DNA of 63,461 nt, filler included, from Perkinsus chesapeaki ATCC PRA-425 (taxonomy: Eukaryota; Protista; Perkinsozoa), in assembly GCA_013115145.1 (NCBI GenBank). It is 15 parts of 15 records of this genome, joined end to end, with 100 filler letters (N's around TTAATTAATTAA, not from the genome) between each part and the next. Parts side by side here need not be neighbours in the genome. Positions count along the whole stretch, not along the records: positions 21,198 to 35,095 come from JAAPAO010000772.1; 14 more parts are not named here. The stretch is one strand, 5' to 3'. The notes under the pieces were generated by a model, which saw only the letters and a program-made list of their open reading frames with translations, did not search any database and was not told the DNA's origin. Positions 12,059-36,185 of the stretch are shown here, in pieces. Position 1 is the stretch's first letter. Each line of letters opens with the position of its first letter. Position numbers and translations under genes: made by a program.

Positions 12059-12954
12059 TGATACGGAGGAGGAGATATAATAGAAAGGAGTTTGATAGGA
12101 AATATGTTACTAGTGATACGNNNNNNNNNNNNNNNNNNNNNNNNNNNNNNNNNNNNNNNNNNNNTTAATTAATTAANNNNNNNNNNNNNNNNNNNNNNNN
12201 NNNNNNNNNNNNNNNNNNNNGCTTAAATTTGACCCAAGGAATATCTAATTTTTTCATTGGGGAGGTACTTTTGCGTATACCAATACGATAAAACTAGGTA
12301 GTGAAGAGCAGCAGCTCAATGCGAAACTGTCAGTTTACACTAAGAGGACAGACGGCATACTGGTAGGTTTGAATTAGTAAAAATATATATACACTTTATG
12401 GCATCATTTTGAATAGCTAACTGCATGTAAATGCGTGCACTATGCACGCGTTCGCATTGGCCAGTTTAGAGAAGTCAACAGGACTATCTGCAGATAAGTT
12501 ATCTGAGATAACGACTGTTCTCTTCGATCATGATATCCTCCCTCTTTAAGAGAAGGTTCCTAGCCATGTTACTGTCATGAATCCTTTTGGTTGTATTCGG
12601 CTTGGCGTCCACGTGCGACGGAAACGAGTGGCCGCGAATGTTAGGCTAACAATGTTAGCTGGTAAGTGAGCCAGCGCCCCATTTCCCATAACTTTCAAAG
12701 AGCCGAGAACATGCTCACACCCCTCCGAGAAGGGTCGAGTAGTTTTGCAGTAAATTGATATAATGGGAAATGCCGTATAACCAGTCATTACCTGGCAGAT
12801 AGCTGGATATCGCCATTTGGTTATCGGGAAAACCGCTAAATGGTAAATCGAATTACCACTTCGCGGGATAACTCTATCGAATATCTCGTACTTACGACAT
12901 GACCAATGCCGTCCAAGATAATATGTGGTAATCGCGATGAGGTAAGGTAAGCGC

Positions 12955-21933: not shown

Positions 21934-22758
21934 TTAACCTATTTTGTATCTTGCATGCTTCAACCTACGCTTCCAATCATTAATGGAATCACCATCCTTA
22001 TCAGCGTCTATCGAGGCGTCTTTCAATATCCACAAGAGCTTGTCCTTTGAAAGCTTACTATCCGACGCGTCCTCTAAACTGCCGTCTGAAGAATCCGAAT
22101 AATACAACTCACCAGGATGTGAGGCATCCCAGAACAACATTGTAAAATAGAGTAGAACAAGTTTAGCTTGCTGCCAGTGCTGCAGCCTGTTTTTTTATAC
22201 AAGTCTGATGGGAGTTATGCAACAATAACAACAACTTAGACGCCCCATTTGTCCTATGGGTTTCAAGGTGATATATTTCCAACGCATGTTGCTCATTGGA
22301 GACAACAGCAAGAAAGGAGAGCGAGGAATGCGCCACGAAATTGCTGGCTGCTTACCGCTGGTCTCCCCCGGCGCCTCGCCAGGCTCGTTCATAGCTTCCT
22401 CAGCGATACAAAGGCATCTATGTATCCAAATCATAATGTAAGTCATAACTCTGTCATAGGTATCCATAGGTCGAAATGAACCTGTAACACAAAAACTGTC
22501 TCCCTCGACAGTGGTGCGGCAGGTGGTACCGAGATGCCTGCCCTCTCGAACAGCTCCATCTACCACGGCGTTCGCCATCGGCGAAGTGTAAGTACCCAAA
22601 GCCAAGATGTCCAACCGAAATGCTTTCAATGCTTCATCAACAATATCAAGGTAATCTGAAGTCAGTAGTAGGTTTTCAGTATCGACCAAAAAAAAAAAAA
22701 GGGAATCATAGAAATTATGCTTCAATGGAACAAAGTGAAAAATGTCGAGTAGGCGCAA
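21934..22758 (-). CDS. Hypothetical protein, probably multi-exon
   Basis: Two protein-like ORFs (22195-22758 and 21934-22140) separated by intron-like sequence. No domain recognised. Confidence 0.35.
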
Positions 22759-23748: not shown

Positions 23749-25390
23749 TCACATTTTACCTGCTCCTATCTTAACATGGGGATCACGTACCATCCTCGCA
23801 AAGCCGTGCTCCCCCCAATCAGACCCCCAGCTATTCCTGACAGTCCAGTAACTGACAATACGAGAATAACAGCGAGGGGTCGCCCCCATCAACCTCATCA
23901 TCCTCACTTTATTCCGTCCTCGCTTACGCCGTAGCCAACCAAAAGCATAAAGTGAATGGGGTATTCTGTGCAGTTGAGCCCTTAACATGCACGCATGTAT
24001 TGATATGAAAACTAACGCACCCTGAAGAATCCCTCCGCGGTAGAACGGCCACTCCGACGCGATGACATCGATTCCCACGGCGACTGGCGCCTCCTGGATT
24101 CTCTCAAACAGACCATCAAGTCTCTTCGAGCCGATTACAGTAACATCAATCCCACGGAGCTCACCGACCTGAGAAATTCCCTTAACTCTCGAGCCGGACA
24201 GCCCCCTGCCCCCTGCTCCCATCGCCCCAAGCATTCCCACCCGTAGGCACTGCTTTGATACATCATCAGTAACAGCATGGTTGCAGAAGCCATCCTTAGC
24301 TTTATAAGGATAACTCGAGTTGGATACCAGACCGTGTCTGTTGATATATCTCAAAGAATTGGCAATGTTCCCCTTTGAACACCCTCTGACCAAATAAGTG
24401 ATGATGATGCCAGTCGTTACAAGTAGGTTCATTACACATTTCCTTCCCCTCTCGAGCAATCAACTATTTGCTGTACTGAAGTTCGCGGCGGCATCCATGT
24501 CTTTTTCCAGATGGCCGCTTCAATCACGCCTATAGTAGCGGGCATGCTTCAACCAGCGCATTCCTCGCCCCCCCATTTCGCGATCCCTGGATGTTCAGCA
24601 GAAGGATAAATGACAGAAGTTCAATACAGAAGGAGCTTTTCATCACGAATCTGTTCAGGAATCACATCATTCGACATTACAGCGGAGAGAGGACCAAGTG
24701 TAATTACCAATGGTCCTTTTTTGCATCCACCAGCACAAGCAGGATAAGAGACCCCCTCATTTCCATAACGCCGCTGCTCATCGACCGACCCGCCTCTCAA
24801 CTGCCTAGTGTAGCAGCCGCATAGCAGCTGCCGCACGACAATTGTCGCATAGGAGGGTGGACAGCTCCTTTTTTAACCCAGTCGATCTCTGCTGGAGCGT
24901 GAAGTGTCACGTTGGGAACGTAAGGTTCGTCAGACACTTGAAATGGACTAGAATGCTTCCCCATTTCCGACCGGACATCCCCACTGGTCATCAGCCCTGA
25001 TGCGCCGAAGATCTCCTCTCGCGTCATTGCTGCGTACTTGTTGACTTCCAACGTATACGAGCGATCTGAGGGACATCTCGCACTTATAACGAAGGCTACA
25101 CCAATAATGCAGACGATGACATCATCGGTAACATTGTCGTTCAATCAATCTACTCCCACATTCCCGCACTACGTTTGTTATTCTCCTTATCGATGAACCT
25201 GAAGTTCCTTTTGAATACTTGGAATCTATATGCATCCTCAGCGTCATCAGCAAAGTTCATCGAATATCTGAAGGAACGGTATGAGCAGTTCTGCCATCCT
25301 GCCGCACTTCTGCTTGAAAGCGAGATACGCTTTCTTGATTCGTCCACTACAATCATCGGTGCCGCCGCCGCGGTAGTACGGCAGGTACTA
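23749..25390 (-). CDS. Papain-family (C1A) cysteine protease with an I29 propeptide, multi-exon
   Basis: ERFNIN-like EDAYRFQVFKRNFRFIDKEN, NKYAAMTREE, IDW..GAV, RQLSCGSCY (Cys 24824-24826), IPHSLYAFGW (His 23956-23958) and YWTVRNSWGSDWGEHG (Asn 23833-23835). The start was not resolved. Confidence 0.88.
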
Positions 25391-26975: not shown

Positions 26976-29900
26976 ATGAGTGCACCAGGCGGCAAAGGTA
27001 CATCCAATACAAGCAACATAGGGCAGGATGTCCAGCGCGAGGACATTACCATCGAGTTGCCTCCCCATCATCCACTTTACCCGGGGACGGATCTCGCCGA
27101 TATGTCCCCGTTAAGACACTCCTTATCGAGGCCAGAAAGGAGGCAATCTGTAATGAGGGATCTTTCCAAATGGTCGTTGTTGGGACATGGTATCTTTTAG
27201 TCGATCAATGTGCTTGGCTTCGACCTCTATGATGCTGTTGAGGTCGAACAGAAGGGGTGGCGCGGCGCCAAGGAATGGGTTCCCGGGACGATTGTCCAAG
27301 TGAATGCTCATAACAATACGTTTGACGTTAAGGTAGCTTGGATTGAGCTTTTATAAAGAGTCTCAATGGGAATGATAGGTATTGAAGCCGAACCAAGAGG
27401 GGGAGGTATTGGAGAACGTTAATCCTTTGAAACTAAGGCGAATTGCAGAGTCCAGACATCCACATCAGCAGAAGGCGGAGGACAGCCCTCAATGTAGTCG
27501 AGATTAGGCGGAAATACGGTAGAATTATCTAACTCAGTGGGGCCTGTTCCGGGAGATTCTCCTACTCATGGTGGACAAGACTTTTTGAAGCAGCGTCATT
27601 TGGGGGCGGCCGATGCCTGTGAAATCATGGACGAGTTTAACTTCCAAATGCAGGCTAGCTTGTTCACTTCCAAAGTAATAGCTGCAGTCGAGCCGACCTC
27701 AAAAATATCTTTGTCGAATAGGTTCTGAAACAGTTGGATTCTGTCCCTGAAGCTGACCTTATGGCTGTATCCCCTTGCGTCAAGTCATTAGCCCATGCCA
27801 GAGGTAATACAGTGGTAAAGGCGCTGTGTAAATGGGGCGAGAATAACCTAATATGAAAGAAGACAAGCGGCTTACCATCCTTCTCGTCGCTACTTCATAG
27901 ATTGGTGCTTAGATCGAACTAGGAGTCGTGTTGAAAGCGGCGAGGGCCCGCTGCTGGATCGATTCTTCTTTCAATGTGACACGGATGAAGCAGCAGGCCA
28001 AGCCTCGGGGTTCCCGACTAGCGCTCAAGTGAGTTAAACGGGGGCATCACTGGGGATCGAACCGGGGACCTTTAGGTGATGAAAATGCTAGAAAGCATTA
28101 CTGACTTCCACGCCAATTGTCCTTTTACAAACTCGGGTGGAGTTGCCGATGTGGCGATGGGCACCAACTGTATCGTGGCGGACCGTCACTGTGAGGAGGT
28201 AATGCGGGGTTGGGGTCTGTTTCTTCCTTATGGTGGTCTCCGGAGAACTCCGTATACGAGGCTGGGAGCTGCAAAGCTCAAGTTGGCTTGGCGTGAGGTT
28301 TCGCCCGAACTTCCCTTGTGTCGTCGTCCATATATATAATCCGTCATTTATCTATATTCGGACTTGGCTGTCAGATTTGCAGCCCAGAAGCGATGGTTCG
28401 ACTCTTGGACAAAATGTACGAGTTGCTCGAAATGGAGGCGCCGGTAAGACCATGGTCGTTCATAGGGTTGACCCGGGTTCGAATCCCCGTTGGTGCATTT
28501 CAGACCGCCCTCATATCGGTGACGGTTCCAGCAGATGGACGTCTAGTGGTAGTGGGGGATACACATGGGCAGCTGGAAGATGTCCTGTGGATGCTATTCA
28601 AGCATGGTGTACCTAATAAGAATAATGTGTAATAAAATACCCTCGCCAGGGATCGAACTCGCCTGCTATGGGTAGGTATCTTTTCAACGGGGATATCGCC
28701 GATCGAGGCGGACATGCATTGGAGATATTCATTCTATTGTTCTTGTTCAAGCTACTGTGCCCGCAGAGCGTAAGCAGCCGTTTCGGCATCGAAAGGTCCC
28801 CGGTTCGATCCTCGGTGACGGTATTCAGGTATATATTCTGAGAGGGAATCATGAGGATGACTATTGCAATTTAAACTACGGCTTTCTGGCCGAACTGAGA
28901 CATAAATTTGGTCAAGTTGAAGGTGGACGAATGCATAGAGATTTCCTCAGGGTAGTACAGAGGCATATCACGACTCGCAATTTCCTATATTTCGCCTTTA
29001 CGCATAAGCGATGATGATACGTAATCATACAATAATCGTTCTTACGTCATATTGTCGACCTTCTTCGTATCTTTCACGCATCATATCTTCGACCTCCTTT
29101 GTATCTTTCACGCATTGTATCTTTGACCTCTTTTGTATCTTTCACGCATCATATCTTTGACCTCCTTTGTATCTTTCACGCATCATATCTTTGACCTCTT
29201 TTGTATCTTTCACGCATCGTATCTTTGACCTCTTTTGTATCTTTCACGCATCGTATCTTTGAGCTCCTCCTCCTTCTCTTTTCCCAGGTATTCTATTCCC
29301 TACCATTATCATGTATTATTGATTCTTGGGATGGCTACTACAGATGCCAACAAACCCACATGTTGGTTCAACTCAAAGTCGGCTCCTCAGCCGTATCCGT
29401 CACCGACCTCCCCGGACAGCACAGGCGTGTGGTAGCACTGAATCCAAACTTGCCACTGTCGTGTCTGACACTGAGCGTTAGATACCAGTAATGCTGCGGG
29501 AATGTACTAACGAGGATACTTCAGACAGCAGCTCCGGAGATGAGGATAATATTAATGCGGAAAATGGATGGTATCAGGTAAGCGGTCTCCTCTTAGCGGA
29601 GCGAAGCGATTCATATTGTCATTTTTCCTGACTGCTGCCTCTGTTCAGGGTGGAGTATCTGAAGAGCGTTTAGTGTTCGTCAAGCGTGTAGGTGTCCGAG
29701 GGTTGAATGAGAATGGCGAAACTGAGGTGGGTGTTCCCTTTTCTTTAGGTGGTTGATGGTTACGGTTTTCAGATTAAATGGTCATCTGGAGATATTTGGA
29801 CGTACGTATCACCTAGGCTCATAGTGTTGCATGGAGGCTTGCCAATGCATCCCGCATCAGGATCGCCAATCAGCTCTCAGAGGCCAAGTGGGGCATTTGC

Positions 29901-32900
29901 TTCATTATTCTCGTAAGATAAATAGTGGAACGGTTAACATTGTCTGTTAGTAATCTTTTGACCCGGGTTCTATCCCTGGTCGGGTTATATTATTATTTTT
30001 AGGGGTGCCTCAGCAATGGGCCCTCAATCAGTGAGCAGCCAAGGAGACGACGGCAGGAAATGCGTCCTGCTAAAGTACTTCCACCAGCTCCCGAACAGGA
30101 TGCGAATTCCAAGCTCGCCCCAGGGTGTCTTTGAGCAGTGGATGTATCAGATCCTCTGGAGTGATCCGAGGTAGTAGAGATCAGAGGGAGGATGGGGAGG
30201 GGTGTTGAATTGGTGGCTTAGGGAGGTTGGAGATACAAAGGGGAGAGGCACACCGTTCTATCCGGACGATACGGAGCTATTCTGTGAAAGAAATAACATT
30301 CAGACGGTGATCAGGTAGTCTAGTGGTAGAGCGTCTGACTGTATACCTTATGTCCCGGGTTCGAATCCTCGTAGGAGCCATCAGCTTCCGGCTATGCAAC
30401 GAGGATTCTCATTCCATCATAAGCATAAACTTATTACTATCTTCTCGGCAAGTAACTACTGCGGGACATCTCAGAACTATGGAGGTAATAATAATAGGAG
30501 ACAGCGGATTGTGACACTGTTGGGATATATGATGTCATTCCACATACATTAGCGAGGGAGAAAAACTTTATGGAATTTTACAGAATTTTGTGGAATTTTG
30601 CAGAATTTTCTGGAATTTTACAGAATTTTCTGGAATTTTACAGAATTTTGTGGAATTTTACAGAATTTTACAGAATTTTCTGGAATTTGACAGAATTTTG
30701 TGGAATTTTACAGAATTTTTGCAGATTTTTGCTGCCCCCGGTATTAAGGAGTGCATTCTCTATAATTATTCGGAGAGGGAGTTTTACACCTACTCTAATG
30801 AATGCCAGCAGATAGCTTTGCGATCTCTCGGCTAAGATTCTCCCGGAGCAGTTGTTTGCGCTGCTGCAGGTCTGCTGATATTCACTACTGAGTTGTTCCC
30901 TGAGATTCAGTACTCCCGGAATCTCTTTGAGCACTGGAGTCCGCCTCTGTCGGTCATTCAAGACGTTTACTCCAAGGTAAGCTGGAAGCGATGCTTTCGA
31001 GGTGATGATGATGCTGTTATTAGCATAAAAATGCGACTCAAGATGTGCGGCAGTACATCGCTCGGGAGACTGAGTCGGCCAGGATGCCGACGGACATGAA
31101 CAGCAGCTCCAAGTGGCTTTACATTGAGCAGAAGGTGTCGGAGTATGCTATGTCGCTCATAGTGCAGAATAAGAGGCATCTTTGGACAAACTTATGGACC
31201 AGAGATGAGGATAAGAATATGAGGGTTGATCTGGCGGACTGGGAAGATGTGAGAGGGGAAAGAGATAGCGGCGAGAGCAGTATAGGCACACTGGGGGAGG
31301 GGATCCATGGAACAGGACAGCTCCCCTGTTGCAGGCGGAGCTTGCGGGAAATGAGGCATTCGTGCTGTCGTATGCGTGCCTTTTTCAACTTGGTTTCTTT
31401 CACTTAGGCATGCGCTCAAGTGGTGGGGCATCAGTTCCCATGGAGAACACTGTTCGTGCAGTTGGATATAGAAGAGGAAGATGATGGTACGGTAGACTAC
31501 CTGGAGTTCCTTAATAGATTCAGAGCCAGTTTGAAGGATGATAGCGGTAACAGTGAAATTAATATCTCGTAATTGCTCGACGCTCTCTCTGTTACAGGCC
31601 CGTTCGACTCCTGGCTGGCCTCGGTGGTTCTAGGATTCTTCATGGACATCCTTAATGCTGATATGGCTATCCAGCAGGACCTCCTCACTGGGTACGAAAT
31701 CCTAGCATTAAGCTAAGATATTCATGGCCATTCAGAGAACCAGGCGAAAATCTTATAAGCTACGAGCAGTTCGAACGCTCCTTGCGGGACAACTGTCCCG
31801 ATTTAACCATTACTCATGTAAGGTGGTGGTGCATCGCTCCGCTAAGTAATAACATATTTTTATCAGATTCAGCTGGCTTGGCAAGCTTTGATCGAATGCT
31901 CTACTCCCGAGCGTCGTCGATCTGGTCTGGTTGATGCCCGCCAGTTCGTGTGTGCGTGCGGGGAGTTCTACCGAGCTCGCTGGGTGAGCCTGTTTTTCTG
32001 ACTGCCCGGGCACGGTTTGATTGGTACGGTTATTCAGGACTTACACGACCCTGTCTTTTCGACTTCGCAAAATTTACCGTCGGCGAGTGAGGAGGAAATG
32101 TTGGAGAAGATCATGGATTTCTTGCCGAGATTGAGAGACTCCATCGAACAGAAATACGACAACGACACTCAGGTTAGAGGTCAATTCTAGCGCGCCCAGG
32201 AAGGCGGATAAACATTGCCGCGGTCACTCCGAGTTGCTTCTACGGCATTCGCTGTTCAGTGGTGTGTTTTCAGCGCTTCTTCGAGGACAGGATAGAAAGC
32301 CGATCTCAGAACAAAATCCCGGGTGCTGTGTCCAATGAAGGTGAACCATCATCCGTATTTTCGGCTTTGTCTGTTATTTCGTTCCATCAGACTTCGTTAA
32401 CGCATTGATTGCCGAGCTCCCCTCGCTCGGCATCACTGAACTCCCGTCACGTAACTTCCTGGAGCTCACGGCACGCATGATGGAGTCAAGCAGTTCAACC
32501 AGTACCGGTCGTCCTGCCGGTCGAGGAGCTCGGCTGGTTAGCTCCACGAACAGCGGTTACGTATCTCTGTTCCGCTTCATGGCCACGCTTCATGTTGATG
32601 GGACATCAGCTGGTCGAGTGATGGCGCAAAAGATCACCGAGCATAGTTGCGCGTCGACTTACTTCCACCGCAACGCTTTCAAGTGCGCCTGTGCGAGGCT
32701 GGACCCGCAAAACTGCGGGGAAATATCCAAGAGGAATTTCCGAAGGGCTTTCATGGCTCTGAATCAAGCGTTGGATCCGGAATGGAGACTGACCAAGTAG
32801 GAAAGGATGCTCGGTGAGGAAGATATTTCCTATCAGGTTGCAGATAGATGCTGCTCTGGATCATTTCGATTGGGTGGTTGATGCTGATGAAGACTACACC

Positions 32901-33303
32901 GATGGTAAGTGACGCTCTCCGCGAGAGGTTGCTCATTTTCATTATTAGCGTCGTCTTCGGACCAAGACATGAAGTCGGTGGATGAAGAGCCGAGTGGGGC
33001 TGGCGGCGGGGCGAGGAGGCCAACTCTAGGAGCACTTTCGGCCTCTAATACGAACAGTGCGTTGGAAATGTTGCGAGGTACAGTCCAGCAACTGTAGCGC
33101 ACATCAATGCAGCGGTTTATCGCTCAGAACGTTCGAGAACGCGTTCTTCGGCACGGTTGATGCTACCGCCTGGGGCTAGCTCACCCGCTCCAATGATCCT
33201 TGATCATCCCCAACCAGAACAAATTGACCAAAAAATGTGGATAAATTACGATCAGTTCTTGAGGTCCTTTGAAATTGCTGATTGGAGGAAGAACAGCAGG
33301 TAG
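26976..33303 (+). CDS. PPEF/rdgC/PP7-like Ser/Thr protein phosphatase with C-terminal EF-hands and many introns
   Basis: PPP motifs [35 protein letters not shown] and [12 protein letters not shown]-hand-like [23 protein letters not shown] and INYDQFL. Splicing restores the frame at each catalytic exon. Confidence 0.9.
28029..28075 (-). other. 47-nt intron carrying an antisense tRNA(Phe)-like 3' half
   Basis: GTGAGT..TTTAG, phase 0 (SAQ/VMK). Reverse complement: CTAAAGGTCCCCGGTTCGATCCCCAGTGATGCC. Confidence 0.8.
28444..28503 (+). other. 60-nt intron carrying a sense tRNA(Gly)-like 3' half
   Basis: GTAAGA..TTTCAG, joins EAP/TAL in frame, and contains GACCCGGGTTCGAATCCCCGTTGGTGCA followed by TTT. 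Confidence 0.85.
28629..28675 (-). other. 47-nt intron carrying an antisense, degenerate tRNA 3' half
   Basis: GTAATA..GGTAG, joins NNV/YLFNGD. Reverse complement: GCAGGCGAG TTCGATC CCTGG CGAGGGT A TTTT. Confidence 0.72.
28770..28828 (+). other. 59-nt intron carrying a sense tRNA variable loop, T arm and acceptor strand
   Basis: GTAAGC..TTCAG, joins [12 protein letters not shown], and contains GAAAGGTCCCCGGTTCGATCCTCGGTGACGGTA. Confidence 0.85.
29067..29264. repeat. Intronic minisatellite, 34-bp unit, about 6 copies
   Basis: GTATCTTTCACGCATCRTATCTTTGACCTCYTTT units start at 29067, 29101, 29135, 29169, 29203 and 29237. Confidence 0.95.
29913..30002 (+). other. 90-nt intron carrying a sense tRNA-like T arm and acceptor strand
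   Basis: Phase-2 GTAAGA..TTTTAG. Contains GAC CCGGG TTCTATC CCTGG TCGGGTT A, with a fully pairing T stem. Confidence 0.7.
30315..30374 (+). pseudogene. 60-nt intron that is essentially a tRNA core (about positions 7-67, with A box and B box)
   Basis: GTAGTCTAGTGGTAGAGCGTCTGACTGTATACCTTATGTCCCGGGTTCGAATCCTCGTAG. Removing it restores VIR/SHQ. The anticodon stem does not pair, so it is not a functional tRNA. Confidence 0.85.
30571..30722. repeat. Intronic minisatellite with a 10-bp base unit (RGAATTTTNN)
   Basis: About 15 degenerate copies of GGAATTTTAC/AGAATTTTGT-type units. Confidence 0.9.
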
Positions 33304-36185
33304 GCCTTGCCATTGACAAATATGATTATCCCTCAGCTGCTGTTTCAGGGCTGGTTCGTTTGGCTGGCATCTGCTGCGCAACAGCATGTTGAGATTTTAA
33401 CGATTTACATTGAGTGATGATATCATCAGTGTCTGTCGCACTAGTAGTAGCTGTCCTTTACCGACATTAGTGATGTGGATGGTGATTGGTGACATCTTAT
33501 CGAACAACCACAGTCTCATTTATTTACTAGTCATTTGGTTCGTAGTGTTAATGGTGAAGTAGAGGAGCAAGATAACTGGGAGACATATTTCTAACAATAG
33601 GCCAAGGGAAGGGAAGGCCAAGTATATGACATAATCGTTATTAATCGATCGCACCGAGTACATTTGTATGTTCCTAAAGTCGTAAAGAACATCTTTTCCG
33701 TCCAGAATGGATAAATATAAAGCAAGCTCCAGCGGAATGAGCTTCCTTACCGTTAGTTATCATTCAACCAGGATCTTCATTCTCCAGGGTGTGTTAATTA
33801 ATACGAACTAGCATGCTTGCCTGTTCCAACCGTGTTATTTGGTTATCTGTCAACATCACACTCTTCATCATTACTGAACCACAATTGAATTGAGATATCA
33901 CTGATGGGCTGCAGCGGCAGCCATCGATATTATCGATCGTTTATATCACTCGAATGATGCAGTGCGGGTCGTGAAATGACTTGGTCGATTATAAATGTGT
34001 CTGTCTCTAAATAGTTTTAGTACCGCTTGAAGTCCACTTGTCCCCGCCTTTGCTACTAGCAAATTGCTAGTCGGCATGTCCCTATTGTAATGAATCTACT
34101 TGATCAGAAAAAAATCAACGTAACTCAACATCAAAGATGAGGAGCCAAATCTCTCGGCGTGGAAGTTAGCGGTAGATGGTGACACCGCTTCAACCTCCGA
34201 GCACTGGATGAGACGAGTGGTGGAAGTTACCGGATTACGCATCGCTTCCTCGTTGTGTGCAAAGACGCTGCAACGTTTACCTATATCAAGATATAGGTTC
34301 GGCTTCCGTCTCGGTACATACCACGCTCAGCGAAGTGATCCACACGCTGGTCAAATACGAATGATGGGACCCCTGCACAAAAGCCCAGCAACAACAGGAA
34401 GAATGATTGATGAATATCCATAATATTCACACTCAGGTGTAATGCTAGGAGTTATTGTGTCTTTCACAGCCCGAACGGCCAACACAACAAAAGCATCAGA
34501 CCAGATGATACAGGAAGGTTCTTCGGAAGAGTACCTTACGTTAAATAAACCATCAACTAGCACATACTTGCACTCAAGAGCGCACCGAATCTTCTCGGCT
34601 CTGACCACTGCACTGCAGTGACCGGAACCCAATTCTTCCTCTCAATGAGTTGAGAATTATTCTAAGAAGAGAAGCAGAAATGTAGTAATAATATTGATAA
34701 TGGCGGACCGAACCTCAACCTTGAATGACTACCAGGTAGATGGCCATCATAGGGAGTGGGTTAGGGGCCGTTGATTTATCCGCCATATCACTATGGCGCG
34801 TGACCTGCCTATGCGTGATCCATGTCTATGAGAAGTGCACGTGAAACAACGGGCAACGTGTATTACATTAGGGGACGTGACAGGTACGTTCGGCTATGAA
34901 CCTCCGTCATACCACTCTTTCATCGTGTTTCGCGCTCTCTCTTCTGGAAGAGGTCTGCTACTGACCGGTAACTTGAAATTAGTTAGGGACATGATAGACT
35001 CCAGCGGAGCGCTACCGGACATTGTAAAGGAGTAGACAATATGTATCTGTTGGAGTATTTATTGGCGTAGGCTAGATCATTCTATGTGCACTAGTNNNNN
35101 NNNNNNNNNNNNNNNNNNNNNNNNNNNNNNNNNNNNNNNTTAATTAATTAANNNNNNNNNNNNNNNNNNNNNNNNNNNNNNNNNNNNNNNNNNNNCCAAA
35201 GAATATCGATGAACATTCGCTGAGGCAGATGCTGACAGGACGTGGGTTGATGGAGGAGATGACTGTGTAGACGGCAGAGAAGGCGGCGATGCTGCGAATG
35301 CTAAGCATTTAGACTTGATGCTGGCAAAGCTAACAAACATCACATTAACGAGCTAATGACCGAAGTAGTACATCTTTTAATATGGAGTATATCACCAGAT
35401 TCGGGCCCCGGCCGAAACGGCTGTCGGTTTCTTTCAGGAGTATCTTTACGCTCGCGTGCCATTTAGAATGTCGACCGTCATGCACAAAGGGGCGGCTCGA
35501 AATGTTGGATAGACGGAGCGGATCCGTCGGAGCTAGACGGCCAAGTTACCGGCCGCAGCCCTAAAACGGAGAGCATGATCTTGTATATCACCAACTTCGT
35601 GACACTAAGTGATCAAATCTTGTTGCTCGTTATTAGGAATTGTTGCTTGGCAAGAAGTTTAAACCCAGGTTTTAAACCTGGTACCTGCTCATGTGACGTC
35701 TGCTGCCGACGAATAATTCGTCCTCATCGTCCTCATGGGCCCATATTCGAGCCTCGAATGTCGAGAAAACCACATGATTCAATTTGGTGATTCTCAGAGG
35801 TGGGTGTCAGGATTGAGCCTGGGTCGTCTTACTGTGTAGTGTAGAGTCTACATTGCAGACTGCGAGCTCAAGCCCAAGATAAACCGCAAAAGCAGTAGCT
35901 GAACATTTCGGACCGAAATTTTCGGTTACCGAAATGTAAGCTGCCGTAGCTAGCTTACAGTCGTCAATTCGAATGTTTTTTTCTCAGAAACCCGAGAAAG
36001 TCAATGAGCTTACAAGGCAAATGACGCTCGCTGAGGCGTTTGTTTGAATAACCTAGTTAATTCTTGATGCATGACGATACGTTCATTACTTCGGGTGTCG
36101 CCTGATTACAGTAATCAGATTACTAGGGTTTCGTGGCTCGGCTTTATTGCCACTAGAGAGGGAATTGTGTTATTCTAGTTATTCT

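What the first reader, a model, noticed from the sequence alone, without database searches (positions are those of the whole stretch)
28029..30374. A family of spliceosomal introns built from tRNA sequence (candidate tRNA-derived intron system)
Seen: six introns of the phosphatase gene (28029, 28444, 28629, 28770, 29913, 30315), plus one in an unrelated gene on another contig (20817), are mostly filled by a tRNA variable loop, T arm with B box (G-TTCGA-NC), acceptor 3' strand, and usually a discriminator A with a short T-rich tail. Removing each restores a conserved or plausible reading frame, including PPP motifs [15 protein letters not shown] and IRSHQ. Three are consecutive and alternate in orientation, and the copies differ, resembling different isotypes. 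Known: tRNA-derived SINEs exist and introner elements create introns, but I know of no described class where tRNA pieces form most of a 47-90 nt spliceosomal intron. Inference: either a tRNA-templated intron-gain or insertion mechanism, or intragenic TFIIIC/Pol III or RNase P/Z signals.
Basis: partly seen in the sequence, partly recalled or inferred. Interest (0 to 1): 0.9.

Follow-up and report, generated by a model that had tools for sequence, protein, structure and literature searches.

The report
Conserved tRNA-gene relics forming Perkinsus introns
Six short introns of a phosphatase gene in the shellfish parasite Perkinsus chesapeaki are made of leftover tRNA-gene ends, and their tRNA promoter motif (the B box) has stayed almost unchanged in three species whose neutral sites are scrambled, so it is probably still in use.

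Summary
Observation confirmed. The piece is a 13.9-kb contig of Perkinsus chesapeaki, and the gene is a PPEF-type phosphatase with about 30 introns.

- **The introns are real.** All six are supported by spliced alignments to four homologues and by the deposited gene model.
- **What they contain.** Each carries the 3' third of a tRNA gene: variable loop AGGTC, T arm/B box, acceptor 3' strand, discriminator and T-run. Four are in sense and two antisense.
- **They are not tRNAs.** ARAGORN and Rfam find none, no fold is significant, and the T stem has decayed.
- **They are not recent.** P. marinus and P. olseni have introns at the same codons, although four-fold sites are near saturation (33-44% identity).
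- **The core is conserved.** The 11-nt B-box core is invariant in 46 of 55 columns, against 11% in the gene's other introns (p about 2e-33).
- **The family is wider.** A covariance model finds more copies in introns of unrelated Perkinsus genes and none in two non-Perkinsus loci.

Best reading: an old, genus-wide family of tRNA-gene relics filling short introns. Selection keeps the B box, most likely as a TFIIIC-binding DNA site. Gene conversion and an RNA-level role remain rivals. Whether the relics created the introns or entered existing ones is unresolved. No RNA-seq was available.

The parts
26976..33397 (+). PPEF-type Ser/Thr phosphatase gene of Perkinsus chesapeaki (deposited protein P0284 = KAF4653964.1, 1303 aa), about 30 GT-AG introns
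   Evidence: Searches identify the organism, the contig (13,898 bp) and the deposited protein. Searches give the exon-intron structure. record Metallophos (P0006, P0027, P0161) and weak EF-hand Pfam hits (P0006) on the homologues.
28029..28075 (+). Intron 1, 47 nt, phase 0. The tRNA relic is antisense: variable loop, T arm, acceptor 3' strand and trailer. The B-box core is at 28053-28063 on the - strand.
   Evidence: Searches give the boundaries. R1 37.3 bits; an 18-nt run is identical in P. olseni, and the core is invariant in three species.
28444..28503 (+). Intron 2, 60 nt, phase 0. The tRNA relic is in sense. The B-box core GGTTCGAATCC is at 28476-28486, followed by TTGGTGC, A, then TTTCAG (T-run plus 3' splice site).
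   Evidence: (37.5 bits). Lengths are 60/62/60 nt in P. chesapeaki, P. marinus and P. olseni, so it is non-coding although in frame here.
28629..28675 (+). Intron 3, 47 nt, phase 2, splitting the codon before [11 protein letters not shown]. The tRNA relic is antisense. The B-box core is at 28649-28659 on the - strand.
   Evidence: 32.3 bits; AGGGATCGAAC invariant in three species.
28770..28828 (+). Intron 4, 59 nt, phase 0, just before VYILRGNHE. The tRNA relic is in sense, with a hairpin that looks like a long variable arm. The B-box core is at 28802-28812, followed by TGACGGT, A, then TTCAG.
   Evidence: (40.9 bits); 28788-28825 matches another P. chesapeaki contig at 36/38 bases, where it is followed by a T-run.
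29913..30002 (+). Intron 5, 90 nt, phase 2. The tRNA relic is in sense. The B-box core GGTTCTATCCC is at 29966-29976, followed by acceptor-like TCGGGTT, A, and a long T/A-rich tail.
   Evidence: Searches give the boundaries (distant orthologues merged it into a longer gap); 37.2 bits; the P. marinus and P. olseni orthologues carry GGTTCGATTCC.
30315..30374 (+). Intron 6, 60 nt, phase 2, inside IRSHQ. This is the most complete relic, in sense: D-arm/A-box-like TAGTCTAGTGGTAGAGC, an anticodon-loop-like CTGTATA (GTA), and the T arm with B box at 30358-30368.
   Evidence: (32.7 bits); the orthologous introns in P. marinus (46 nt) and P. olseni (44 nt) have lost the T arm.

Best explanation
These are old spliceosomal GT-AG introns of the genus Perkinsus whose bodies are decayed 3' portions of tRNA genes. 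Each holds a variable loop, the T arm (which is the B box), the acceptor 3' strand, the discriminator and the Pol III T-run terminator.

They belong to a dispersed family that also fills introns of unrelated Perkinsus genes. The relics no longer encode or fold as tRNA. In sense copies the terminator T-run lies directly before the AG, so it doubles as the polypyrimidine tract of the 3' splice site.

What is maintained is the primary sequence of the B box, GGTTCGANNCC, plus a few flanking bases. The motif keeps its tRNA-oriented asymmetry in both orientations relative to the gene. I infer that purifying selection keeps it because double-stranded DNA is still bound there by the Pol III factor TFIIIC. 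That would make these 'extra-TFIIIC'-type sites inside a Pol II gene. Their downstream role (chromatin boundary, Pol II pausing or something else) is unknown.

**Shown:** intron status by homology, tRNA-gene origin, age, conservation of the core, and absence of RNA structure.

**Inferred:** selection rather than homogenisation, and TFIIIC as the reader of the motif.

**Unresolved:** whether the tRNA pieces created the introns or entered existing introns that later shrank to minimal size around the conserved block.
For: **Introns.** Searches agree on the boundaries. Intron lengths differ between species by amounts that are not multiples of three.

**tRNA-gene origin.** The consensus of 20 copies reads as the 3' third of a tRNA gene plus T-run. 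Intron 6 adds D-arm-like and anticodon-loop-like parts.

**Family.**
- R1 separates members (28-41 bits) from background (11 bits or less).
- Further copies lie in an intron of a C2/hydrolase gene in P. olseni, and in introns of a response-regulator-like gene and a PP1 gene in P. marinus.
- It finds none in two non-Perkinsus loci.

**Age.** The introns sit at the same codons in three species. Four-fold site identity is 0.33 (P. chesapeaki-P. olseni), 0.34 (P. chesapeaki-P. marinus) and 0.44 (P. marinus-P. olseni).

**Constraint.**
- The core is invariant in 46/55 columns, against 196/1770 in the other introns (Fisher p 1.8e-33).
- The rest of the same five introns is invariant at 37%.
- The longest exact runs between P. 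chesapeaki and P. olseni are 18, 11, 11 and 10 nt, against a mean of 5.3 in other introns.
- Substitutions in the core fall mostly on the degenerate B-box positions.
- A chance exonic B-box look-alike at 28395 is not conserved at synonymous sites.

**Not RNA structure.** Fold z-scores range from -2.1 to +1.4. T-stem pairing is 72% against 67.7% in shuffles.

**Not a general splicing signal.** TCGAA occurs 6 times in the other introns, with 5.2 expected.

**Confined to the introns.** Synonymous sites in flanking exons are not unusually conserved.
Against: - No binding or expression data exist. TFIIIC is inferred only from the identity of the motif.
- The B box is nearly palindromic, so conservation in both orientations does not by itself exclude an RNA-level reader.
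- Intron 6 lost its B box in P. marinus and P. olseni, and one P. olseni strain carries GGTTTGA in intron 5. Any constraint is therefore not absolute.
- There are hints of sequence exchange between copies. Part of intron 4 matches another P. chesapeaki locus at 36/38 bases, although that part is absent from the orthologues. P. chesapeaki introns 2, 5 and 6 share a CCCGGGTTC block that their orthologues lack.
- The sample is one gene plus about 47 kb of flanks in three species.
- Splicing was not confirmed by RNA.
Confidence: 0.42

Rival explanations
1. Concerted evolution without function. The intronic relics are repeatedly overwritten by ectopic gene conversion, either from the very numerous Perkinsus tRNA genes or from each other. 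The part common to all tRNAs (the B box) therefore stays tRNA-like in every species.
For: - P. marinus has hundreds of tRNA gene copies (PMC3706591).
- Intron 4 shares 36/38 bases with another P. chesapeaki locus, over a stretch that the P. olseni and P. marinus orthologues lack.
- P. chesapeaki introns 2, 5 and 6 share a block that their orthologues lack.
- P. marinus intron 1 and an intron of another P. marinus gene share a 23-nt identical block.
- The pattern of variable positions equals that among tRNA genes, so it cannot separate this idea from selection.
Against: - Flanks only a few bases from the core diverge at near-neutral rates. That would need implausibly short conversion tracts with almost no flanking homology.
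- Copies mostly group by orthology, not by species.
- Conversion from real tRNA genes should also restore the T stem and acceptor, which are decayed.
Confidence: 0.2
2. RNA-level function. The tRNA-like piece in the pre-mRNA or in the excised intron is recognised by a T-loop-binding or tRNA-processing factor (RNase P/Z, La, a pseudouridine synthase). Alternatively it acts as an intronic splicing enhancer or yields a small RNA.
For: - Most copies (4 of 6 here, 3 of 3 in other annotated genes) are in sense.
- Conservation extends beyond the B box into the variable loop and, in intron 2, into the acceptor-like TGGTG.
- There is a weak, non-significant resemblance to the tRNA-like mascRNA at intron 6.
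- The near-palindromic core gives similar RNA in both orientations.
Against: - No stable or conserved fold and no covariation in the T stem.
- Rfam and ARAGORN find nothing.
- Two conserved copies are antisense.
- The motif is not enriched in other introns.
Confidence: 0.13
3. Neutral relics of an introner-like or SINE-like burst. A tRNA-derived mobile element created these introns in the Perkinsus ancestor, and the apparent conservation is an alignment or ascertainment effect.
For: - The family is dispersed in introns of several genes.
- The closest relatives found outside the genus have no introns in this gene.
- The relics fill the introns almost end to end, and the T-run abuts the 3' splice site.
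- The gene is a hotspot: 6 copies in 6.4 kb, against 5 in about 47 kb of other Perkinsus sequence.
Against: - Conservation was measured in species that played no part in choosing the introns, and it is extreme (p 1.8e-33).
- No target-site duplications or terminal repeats are evident.
- The copies look like different isotypes rather than one master element.
- No copy is present in one species and absent in another.
Confidence: 0.1
4. They are functional or split tRNA genes (or Pol III genes) nested in or overlapping the phosphatase gene.
For: - Intron 6 has A-box-like and B-box elements about 40 nt apart.
- At a lowered threshold ARAGORN draws cloverleaves across exon-intron 2 and exon-intron 4.
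Against: - ARAGORN at default settings and Rfam find no tRNA in any locus.
- The low-threshold structures differ between species.
- There is no synonymous constraint in flanking exons.
- Most copies lack the whole 5' half.
Confidence: 0.02

Closest known systems
Extra-TFIIIC (ETC) sites and B-box-only TFIIIC sites (budding yeast ETC, fission yeast COC sites, human ETC and Alu B boxes; e.g. PMC7014570, listed but not read)
   Same: An isolated B-box consensus without a working Pol III gene. Sequence conservation between related species. Location inside or next to Pol II genes. Recognition as DNA, which fits the same tRNA-oriented motif being kept in both orientations relative to the gene.
   Different: Here the sites are visibly relics of tRNA genes and make up most of very short spliceosomal introns. 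Six are clustered in one gene. TFIIIC occupancy is untested. The properties of the known systems are stated from general knowledge, not from a tool result.
Introner elements (Micromonas, Aureococcus, Symbiodiniaceae, Amoebophrya; PMC7789003, PMC11282704)
   Same: Families of related sequences that occupy introns of unrelated genes, in an alveolate lineage. Copies occur in both orientations. A host gene very rich in introns, while the relatives found outside the genus are intronless.
   Different: Known introners are recent and near-identical. They are often flanked by direct or inverted repeats, and they vary in presence between close relatives. These copies are old, diverged, shared by three species, derived from tRNA genes, and show no terminal repeats.
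tRNA-derived SINEs and tRNA pseudogenes
   Same: A tRNA-related sequence with a B box, dispersed in many copies that appear to outnumber real tRNA genes.
   Different: A SINE carries the tRNA-like part, with A and B boxes, at its 5' end, followed by a body and a LINE-like or A-rich tail. Here only the 3' third of the tRNA gene plus its own T-run is present, with no body or tail, and several isotype-like variants occur.
Dada DNA transposons that target tRNA genes in Perkinsus marinus (PMC3706591)
   Same: Same genus. The paper documents an unusual amplification of tRNA genes (for example 349 tRNA-Leu-CTT and 116 tRNA-Gly-GGA copies) and mobile DNA that cuts tRNA genes at the A box (TAGCTC). Intron 6 begins at about that position.
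   Different: Dada elements are 4.7-11 kb and encode a transposase. None lies in this piece, and no link to introns has been described.
tRNA-like RNA elements processed by RNase P/Z (mascRNA type, Rfam RF01684)
   Same: A T-arm-like and acceptor-like sequence embedded in a Pol II transcript.
   Different: The match is not significant (11.4 bits against a gathering score of 42.5). There is no conserved fold. Two copies are antisense.

Membership tests
Spliceosomal (U2-type) intron | GT...AG boundaries, and removal restores an open frame colinear with homologues | tested here: met
   All six have GT-AG, and the spliced product is 92% identical to P0161. Intron lengths differ between species by amounts that are not multiples of three.
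Spliceosomal (U2-type) intron | Spliced junctions seen in RNA | tested here: inconclusive
   Only two tiny RNA data sets exist for this species and nothing from them could be laid.
Functional tRNA gene | Complete cloverleaf detected by tRNA finders or the covariance model | tested here: not met
   ARAGORN finds 0 genes in the piece and in L001-L006. Rfam gives no tRNA hit even on 97-111-nt windows.
tRNA-gene-derived sequence | Ordered variable loop, T stem-loop with GGTTCGANNCC, 7-nt acceptor strand, discriminator and T-run, in one register | tested here: met
   Alignment A1 consensus. The exact motif occurs 3 and 5 times, against 0.0 and 0.3 in shuffles. R1 scores members at 28-41 bits, against 11 or less for background.
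tRNA-derived SINE | 5' tRNA-related head with A and B boxes, then a body and a LINE-like or A-rich tail, flanked by target-site duplications | tested here: not met
   Only the 3' third of the tRNA is present in introns 1-4. There is no body or tail, and no flanking duplications beyond 1-4 nt of splice-site consensus.
Introner elements | Related copies filling introns of unrelated genes | tested here: met
   Further copies lie in an intron of a C2/hydrolase gene (P. olseni) and in introns of a response-regulator-like gene and a PP1 gene (P. marinus).
Introner elements | Recent gain: presence or absence differs between close relatives, with near-identical copies | tested here: not met
   All six are at the same codons in three species with near-saturated four-fold sites. 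The copies are diverged.
Introner elements | Terminal inverted repeats or target-site duplications that supply a splice site | tested here: inconclusive
   The only repeats at the junctions are GTGA, GTA and GTA at three of the six. These cannot be told apart from the AG|GT proto-splice-site consensus.
Extra-TFIIIC (ETC) site | A B-box consensus standing without a functional Pol III gene | tested here: met
   Searches show the motif. Searches show there is no tRNA gene.
Extra-TFIIIC (ETC) site | The motif is conserved between related species beyond neutral expectation | tested here: met
   46/55 core columns are invariant, against 11% in other introns and 31% at synonymous third positions.
Extra-TFIIIC (ETC) site | TFIIIC occupancy without Pol III | not testable with these tools
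   This needs ChIP-seq or CUT&RUN in Perkinsus.

The most novel reading that the evidence does not exclude
Perkinsus keeps thousands of tRNA-gene relics as short introns. From about 1 copy per 10 kb outside this gene and an 87-Mb genome, a very rough extrapolation gives several thousand. In this reading their B boxes work as TFIIIC-bound DNA elements inside Pol II genes. The tRNA gene end, with its T-run terminator, is itself the module that made them spliceable. That would link Pol III promoter relics, intron origin and Pol II gene architecture in a way not described for any eukaryote.
Probability: 0.3. Interest if true: 0.88.

Novelty: new variant of a known kind. Interest (0 to 1): 0.72.

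Why it matters
How new introns arise, and what intron sequence is for, are long-standing open questions. Here a recognisable source (tRNA gene ends) fills a set of introns. A specific 11-nt Pol III promoter element inside them has resisted change over a divergence that randomised synonymous sites.

If the B boxes are bound by TFIIIC, this would be a clear case of Pol III factor sites embedded as introns in Pol II genes. Perkinsus marinus can be cultured and edited (PMC8062965), so the idea is directly testable there. If the cause is instead gene conversion, it would be an unusual example of very short dispersed repeats evolving in concert.

Either way the family offers a simple sequence marker for a genome-wide study of intron history in Perkinsozoa, the sister lineage of dinoflagellates.

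Tried and rejected
1. **Complete tRNAs overlapping the upstream exon.** At a lowered threshold ARAGORN draws cloverleaves over exon-intron 2 and exon-intron 4. The drawings differ between P. chesapeaki and P. olseni, and flanking exons show no excess synonymous conservation. Rejected.
2. **RNA structure.** Folds are no better than shuffles, and T-stem pairing is no better than composition predicts. Rejected as the conserved feature.
3. **The core as a branch-point or general splicing motif.** TCGAA, TTCGA and similar words are not enriched in the other 70-odd introns of three species. Rejected.
4. **Recent intron gain.** Refuted by orthologous introns in P. olseni and P. marinus.
5. **Intron 29578-29648 as a recent, P. 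chesapeaki-specific gain.** I first read it this way because it is absent in P. olseni and its core is multi-copy. P. marinus has an intron at the same codon, so loss in P. olseni is more likely.
6. **The second recurrent motif (GCGGAGCGATG) as an A box.** About 10 such near-matches are expected by chance in the piece by my own estimate, so I do not make the claim.
7. **RNA-seq confirmation.** No run holds the gene.
8. **Pfam and PDB searches with single exons.** These found nothing because the pieces are too short.
9. **Look-up of P0020**, a possible exon product from another relative. It is not on record.

Full report
**What the piece is.**
- A papain-like ORF on the minus strand matches one protein, 'hypothetical protein FOL47_010213 [Perkinsus chesapeaki]'. 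Its longest contig is 13,898 bp, exactly the length of the piece.
- The 90% cluster of the P. olseni orthologue contains the deposited P. chesapeaki protein on that same contig (P0284, KAF4653964.1, 1303 aa). It also contains the P. marinus protein P0282.
- The gene is a PPEF-type phosphatase: Metallophos plus weak EF-hand Pfam hits on the homologues.
- Perkinsus genes are known to have many short GT-AG introns, 1-10 per gene and mostly under 100 bp (PMC3101222). This gene has about 30.

**Are the six segments introns?**
- I wrote a protein-to-genome spliced aligner. Three environmental orthologues are encoded by uninterrupted ORFs (P0006, P0013, P0027). Guided by them, it places introns at 28029-28075, 28444-28503, 28629-28675, 28770-28828 and 30315-30374. 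It leaves the fifth region ambiguous.
- Guided by the P. olseni protein P0161, it gives all six, including 29913-30002, among 28 introns. The spliced product is 92% identical to P0161.
- The deposited P. chesapeaki protein maps to exon blocks that break at the same six places.
- In P. marinus and P. olseni the orthologous introns differ in length by amounts that are not multiples of three (47/52/50, 60/62/60, 47/49/51, 59/57/54, 90/99/96, 60/46/44). They are therefore non-coding.
- No RNA evidence could be obtained. The only RNA data sets of this species are tiny and nothing from them laid on the gene.

**Is the tRNA likeness real?**
- Yes, as a relic. The exact B-box consensus GGTTCGANNCC occurs three times in the piece (none in 30 shuffles). 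With one mismatch it marks all six introns.
- Twenty copies from three species were anchored on the T loop. They give a consensus that reads AGGTC, CCnGG, TTCGATC, CCCGG, TnnGGGC, A, TTT. That is variable loop, T arm, acceptor 3' strand, discriminator and terminator T-run (alignment A1).
- The ends are T-runs, not CCA, so the source was tRNA genes or precursors.
- Intron 6 also keeps a D-arm/A-box-like stretch and an anticodon-loop-like CTGTATA. Intron 4 keeps a hairpin that looks like a long variable arm. The copies therefore look like different isotypes.
- None is a tRNA. ARAGORN and Rfam find nothing. Folds are no better than shuffles. The T stem pairs in 72% of cells against 67.7% in shuffles.

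**Is it a family?**
- A covariance model of A1 (R1) gives a clean gap. Members score 28-41 bits and background scores 11 or less.
- It finds no copy in two non-Perkinsus loci.
- Outside the phosphatase gene it finds a copy in a 58-nt intron of a C2/hydrolase gene in P. olseni.
- In P. marinus it finds copies in a 49-nt intron of a response-regulator-like gene and in an intron of a PP1 gene. Two more lie in a duplicated unannotated segment.
- That is 5 copies in about 47 kb, against 6 in the 6.4-kb phosphatase gene, so this gene is a hotspot.
- DNA contigs of P. chesapeaki from elsewhere in the genome also match introns 1, 3, 4 and 6. One matches 36 of 38 bases of intron 4 and is followed by a T-run.

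**Age and constraint (the main new result).**
- P. olseni (L003, L006) and P. marinus (L005) have introns at the same codons.
- Four-fold degenerate sites are 33%, 34% and 44% identical between the species pairs, which is close to saturation.
- Ordinary short introns are 38-44% identical between P. chesapeaki and P. olseni. Introns 1-4 are 72, 67, 55 and 66% identical.
- The longest exact runs are 18, 11, 11 and 10 nt, against a mean of 5.3 in other introns.
- In three-species alignments the 11-nt core is invariant in 46 of 55 columns. The figure is 196 of 1770 in the other introns (p 1.8e-33), 37% in the rest of the same five introns, and 31% at synonymous third positions.
- Changes in the core fall mainly at the two degenerate positions and at the last base.
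- A chance B-box look-alike in an exon (28395) is not conserved at its synonymous sites.
- Flanking exons show no extra synonymous constraint.
- The T stem's 3' strand and the acceptor strand are not conserved.

**Interpretation.**
- Core conserved, flanks near-neutral, no RNA structure, and the same tRNA-oriented asymmetric motif kept in both orientations. This pattern is what purifying selection on a short protein-binding DNA motif produces.
- The motif is the TFIIIC-binding B box, so TFIIIC is the obvious candidate. I put about 0.4 on this full reading.
- Gene conversion is the main rival, and some observations point that way. Intron 4 has a species-specific match to another locus. P. chesapeaki introns 2, 5 and 6 share a block. 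A 23-nt block is shared by two P. marinus introns. However, conversion should homogenise the flanks too, and the copies mostly group by orthology.
- An RNA-level role cannot be excluded, because the core is nearly palindromic and most copies are in sense.
- In sense copies the T-run directly precedes the AG. A tRNA gene end therefore offers a ready-made 3' splice region.
- Whether that is how the introns arose is open. The alternative is that tRNA genes landed in existing introns that later shrank to the minimal 44-60 nt around the constrained block.

**Literature.** Searches for introners with tRNA, Perkinsus introns with tRNA, tRNA-derived intron gain, and Perkinsus with SINE, tRNA-like or TFIIIC found no description of this. 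The nearest facts are the amplification of tRNA genes and the tRNA-targeting Dada transposons in P. marinus (PMC3706591).

**Verdict.**
- The 'intragenic TFIIIC signal' idea is supported indirectly.
- The finding is a new variant of known kinds (ETC-like sites, introner-like families) and deserves a genome-wide and experimental follow-up.

Noticed in passing
window 31834-31846 (intron 31818-31866); 29594-29612 (intron 29578-29648); L005 14573-14632; L003 14983-15035: There is a second recurrent intronic motif, CATCGCTCCGC (reverse complement GCGGAGCGATG). It is conserved as an exact 11-nt run in all three species (13 nt between P. chesapeaki and P. olseni) in one intron. It is present in sense in another intron, and it occurs in the P. 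marinus and P. olseni intron at residue 962 of P0161. The stretch 29593-29629 also matches several other P. chesapeaki contigs. Its nature is unknown.
   Followed up: partly
window 29578-29648; L005 12254-12304; L003 about 12410-12420: This intron is present in P. chesapeaki and P. marinus but absent in both P. olseni strains, where TGG TAT CAG GGA is contiguous. That suggests a precise intron loss in P. olseni, or less likely two parallel gains.
   Followed up: partly
window 28952-29287 and 30485-30869: Two introns are inflated by tandem repeats. One has a 34-nt unit repeated 6.2 times (29057-29268). The other has 10/20-nt units (30567-30719). The first intron is only 46-55 nt in P. marinus and P. 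olseni.
   Followed up: no
L001 2789-6025, L002 3001-6156 (metagenome contigs): The closest relatives of this phosphatase outside Perkinsus (about 39% identity, many metagenomes) are encoded by single uninterrupted ORFs on gene-dense eukaryote-like contigs. One such contig also carries XPG and DNA polymerase alpha genes. Their organism was not identified.
   Followed up: no
L005 20470-20700 and 21950-22180: P. marinus carries a duplicated segment, about 1.5 kb apart, each with a decayed tRNA-Met-like (CAT) pseudogene ending in a T-run. It lies outside annotated genes.
   Followed up: no
window 28426-28443: The last 18 nt of the exon before intron 2 are identical in P. chesapeaki and P. olseni, including five synonymous sites. 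A windowed three-species test over all introns showed no general excess.
   Followed up: yes
window 23749-25144 (-) and 22195-22758 (-): The neighbouring genes are a papain-family cysteine protease (Peptidase_C1, with introns) and a weak ARPC3/P21-Arc-like ORF. P21-Arc is also called upstream of the phosphatase gene in P. olseni, but not in the part of the P. marinus locus that I fetched. Neither gene carries a tRNA-like intron.
   Followed up: partly
L003 versus L006 (two P. olseni assemblies): The two P. olseni copies of this gene differ at 13% of four-fold sites, which is large for one species. This may reflect divergent haplotypes or strains.
   Followed up: no
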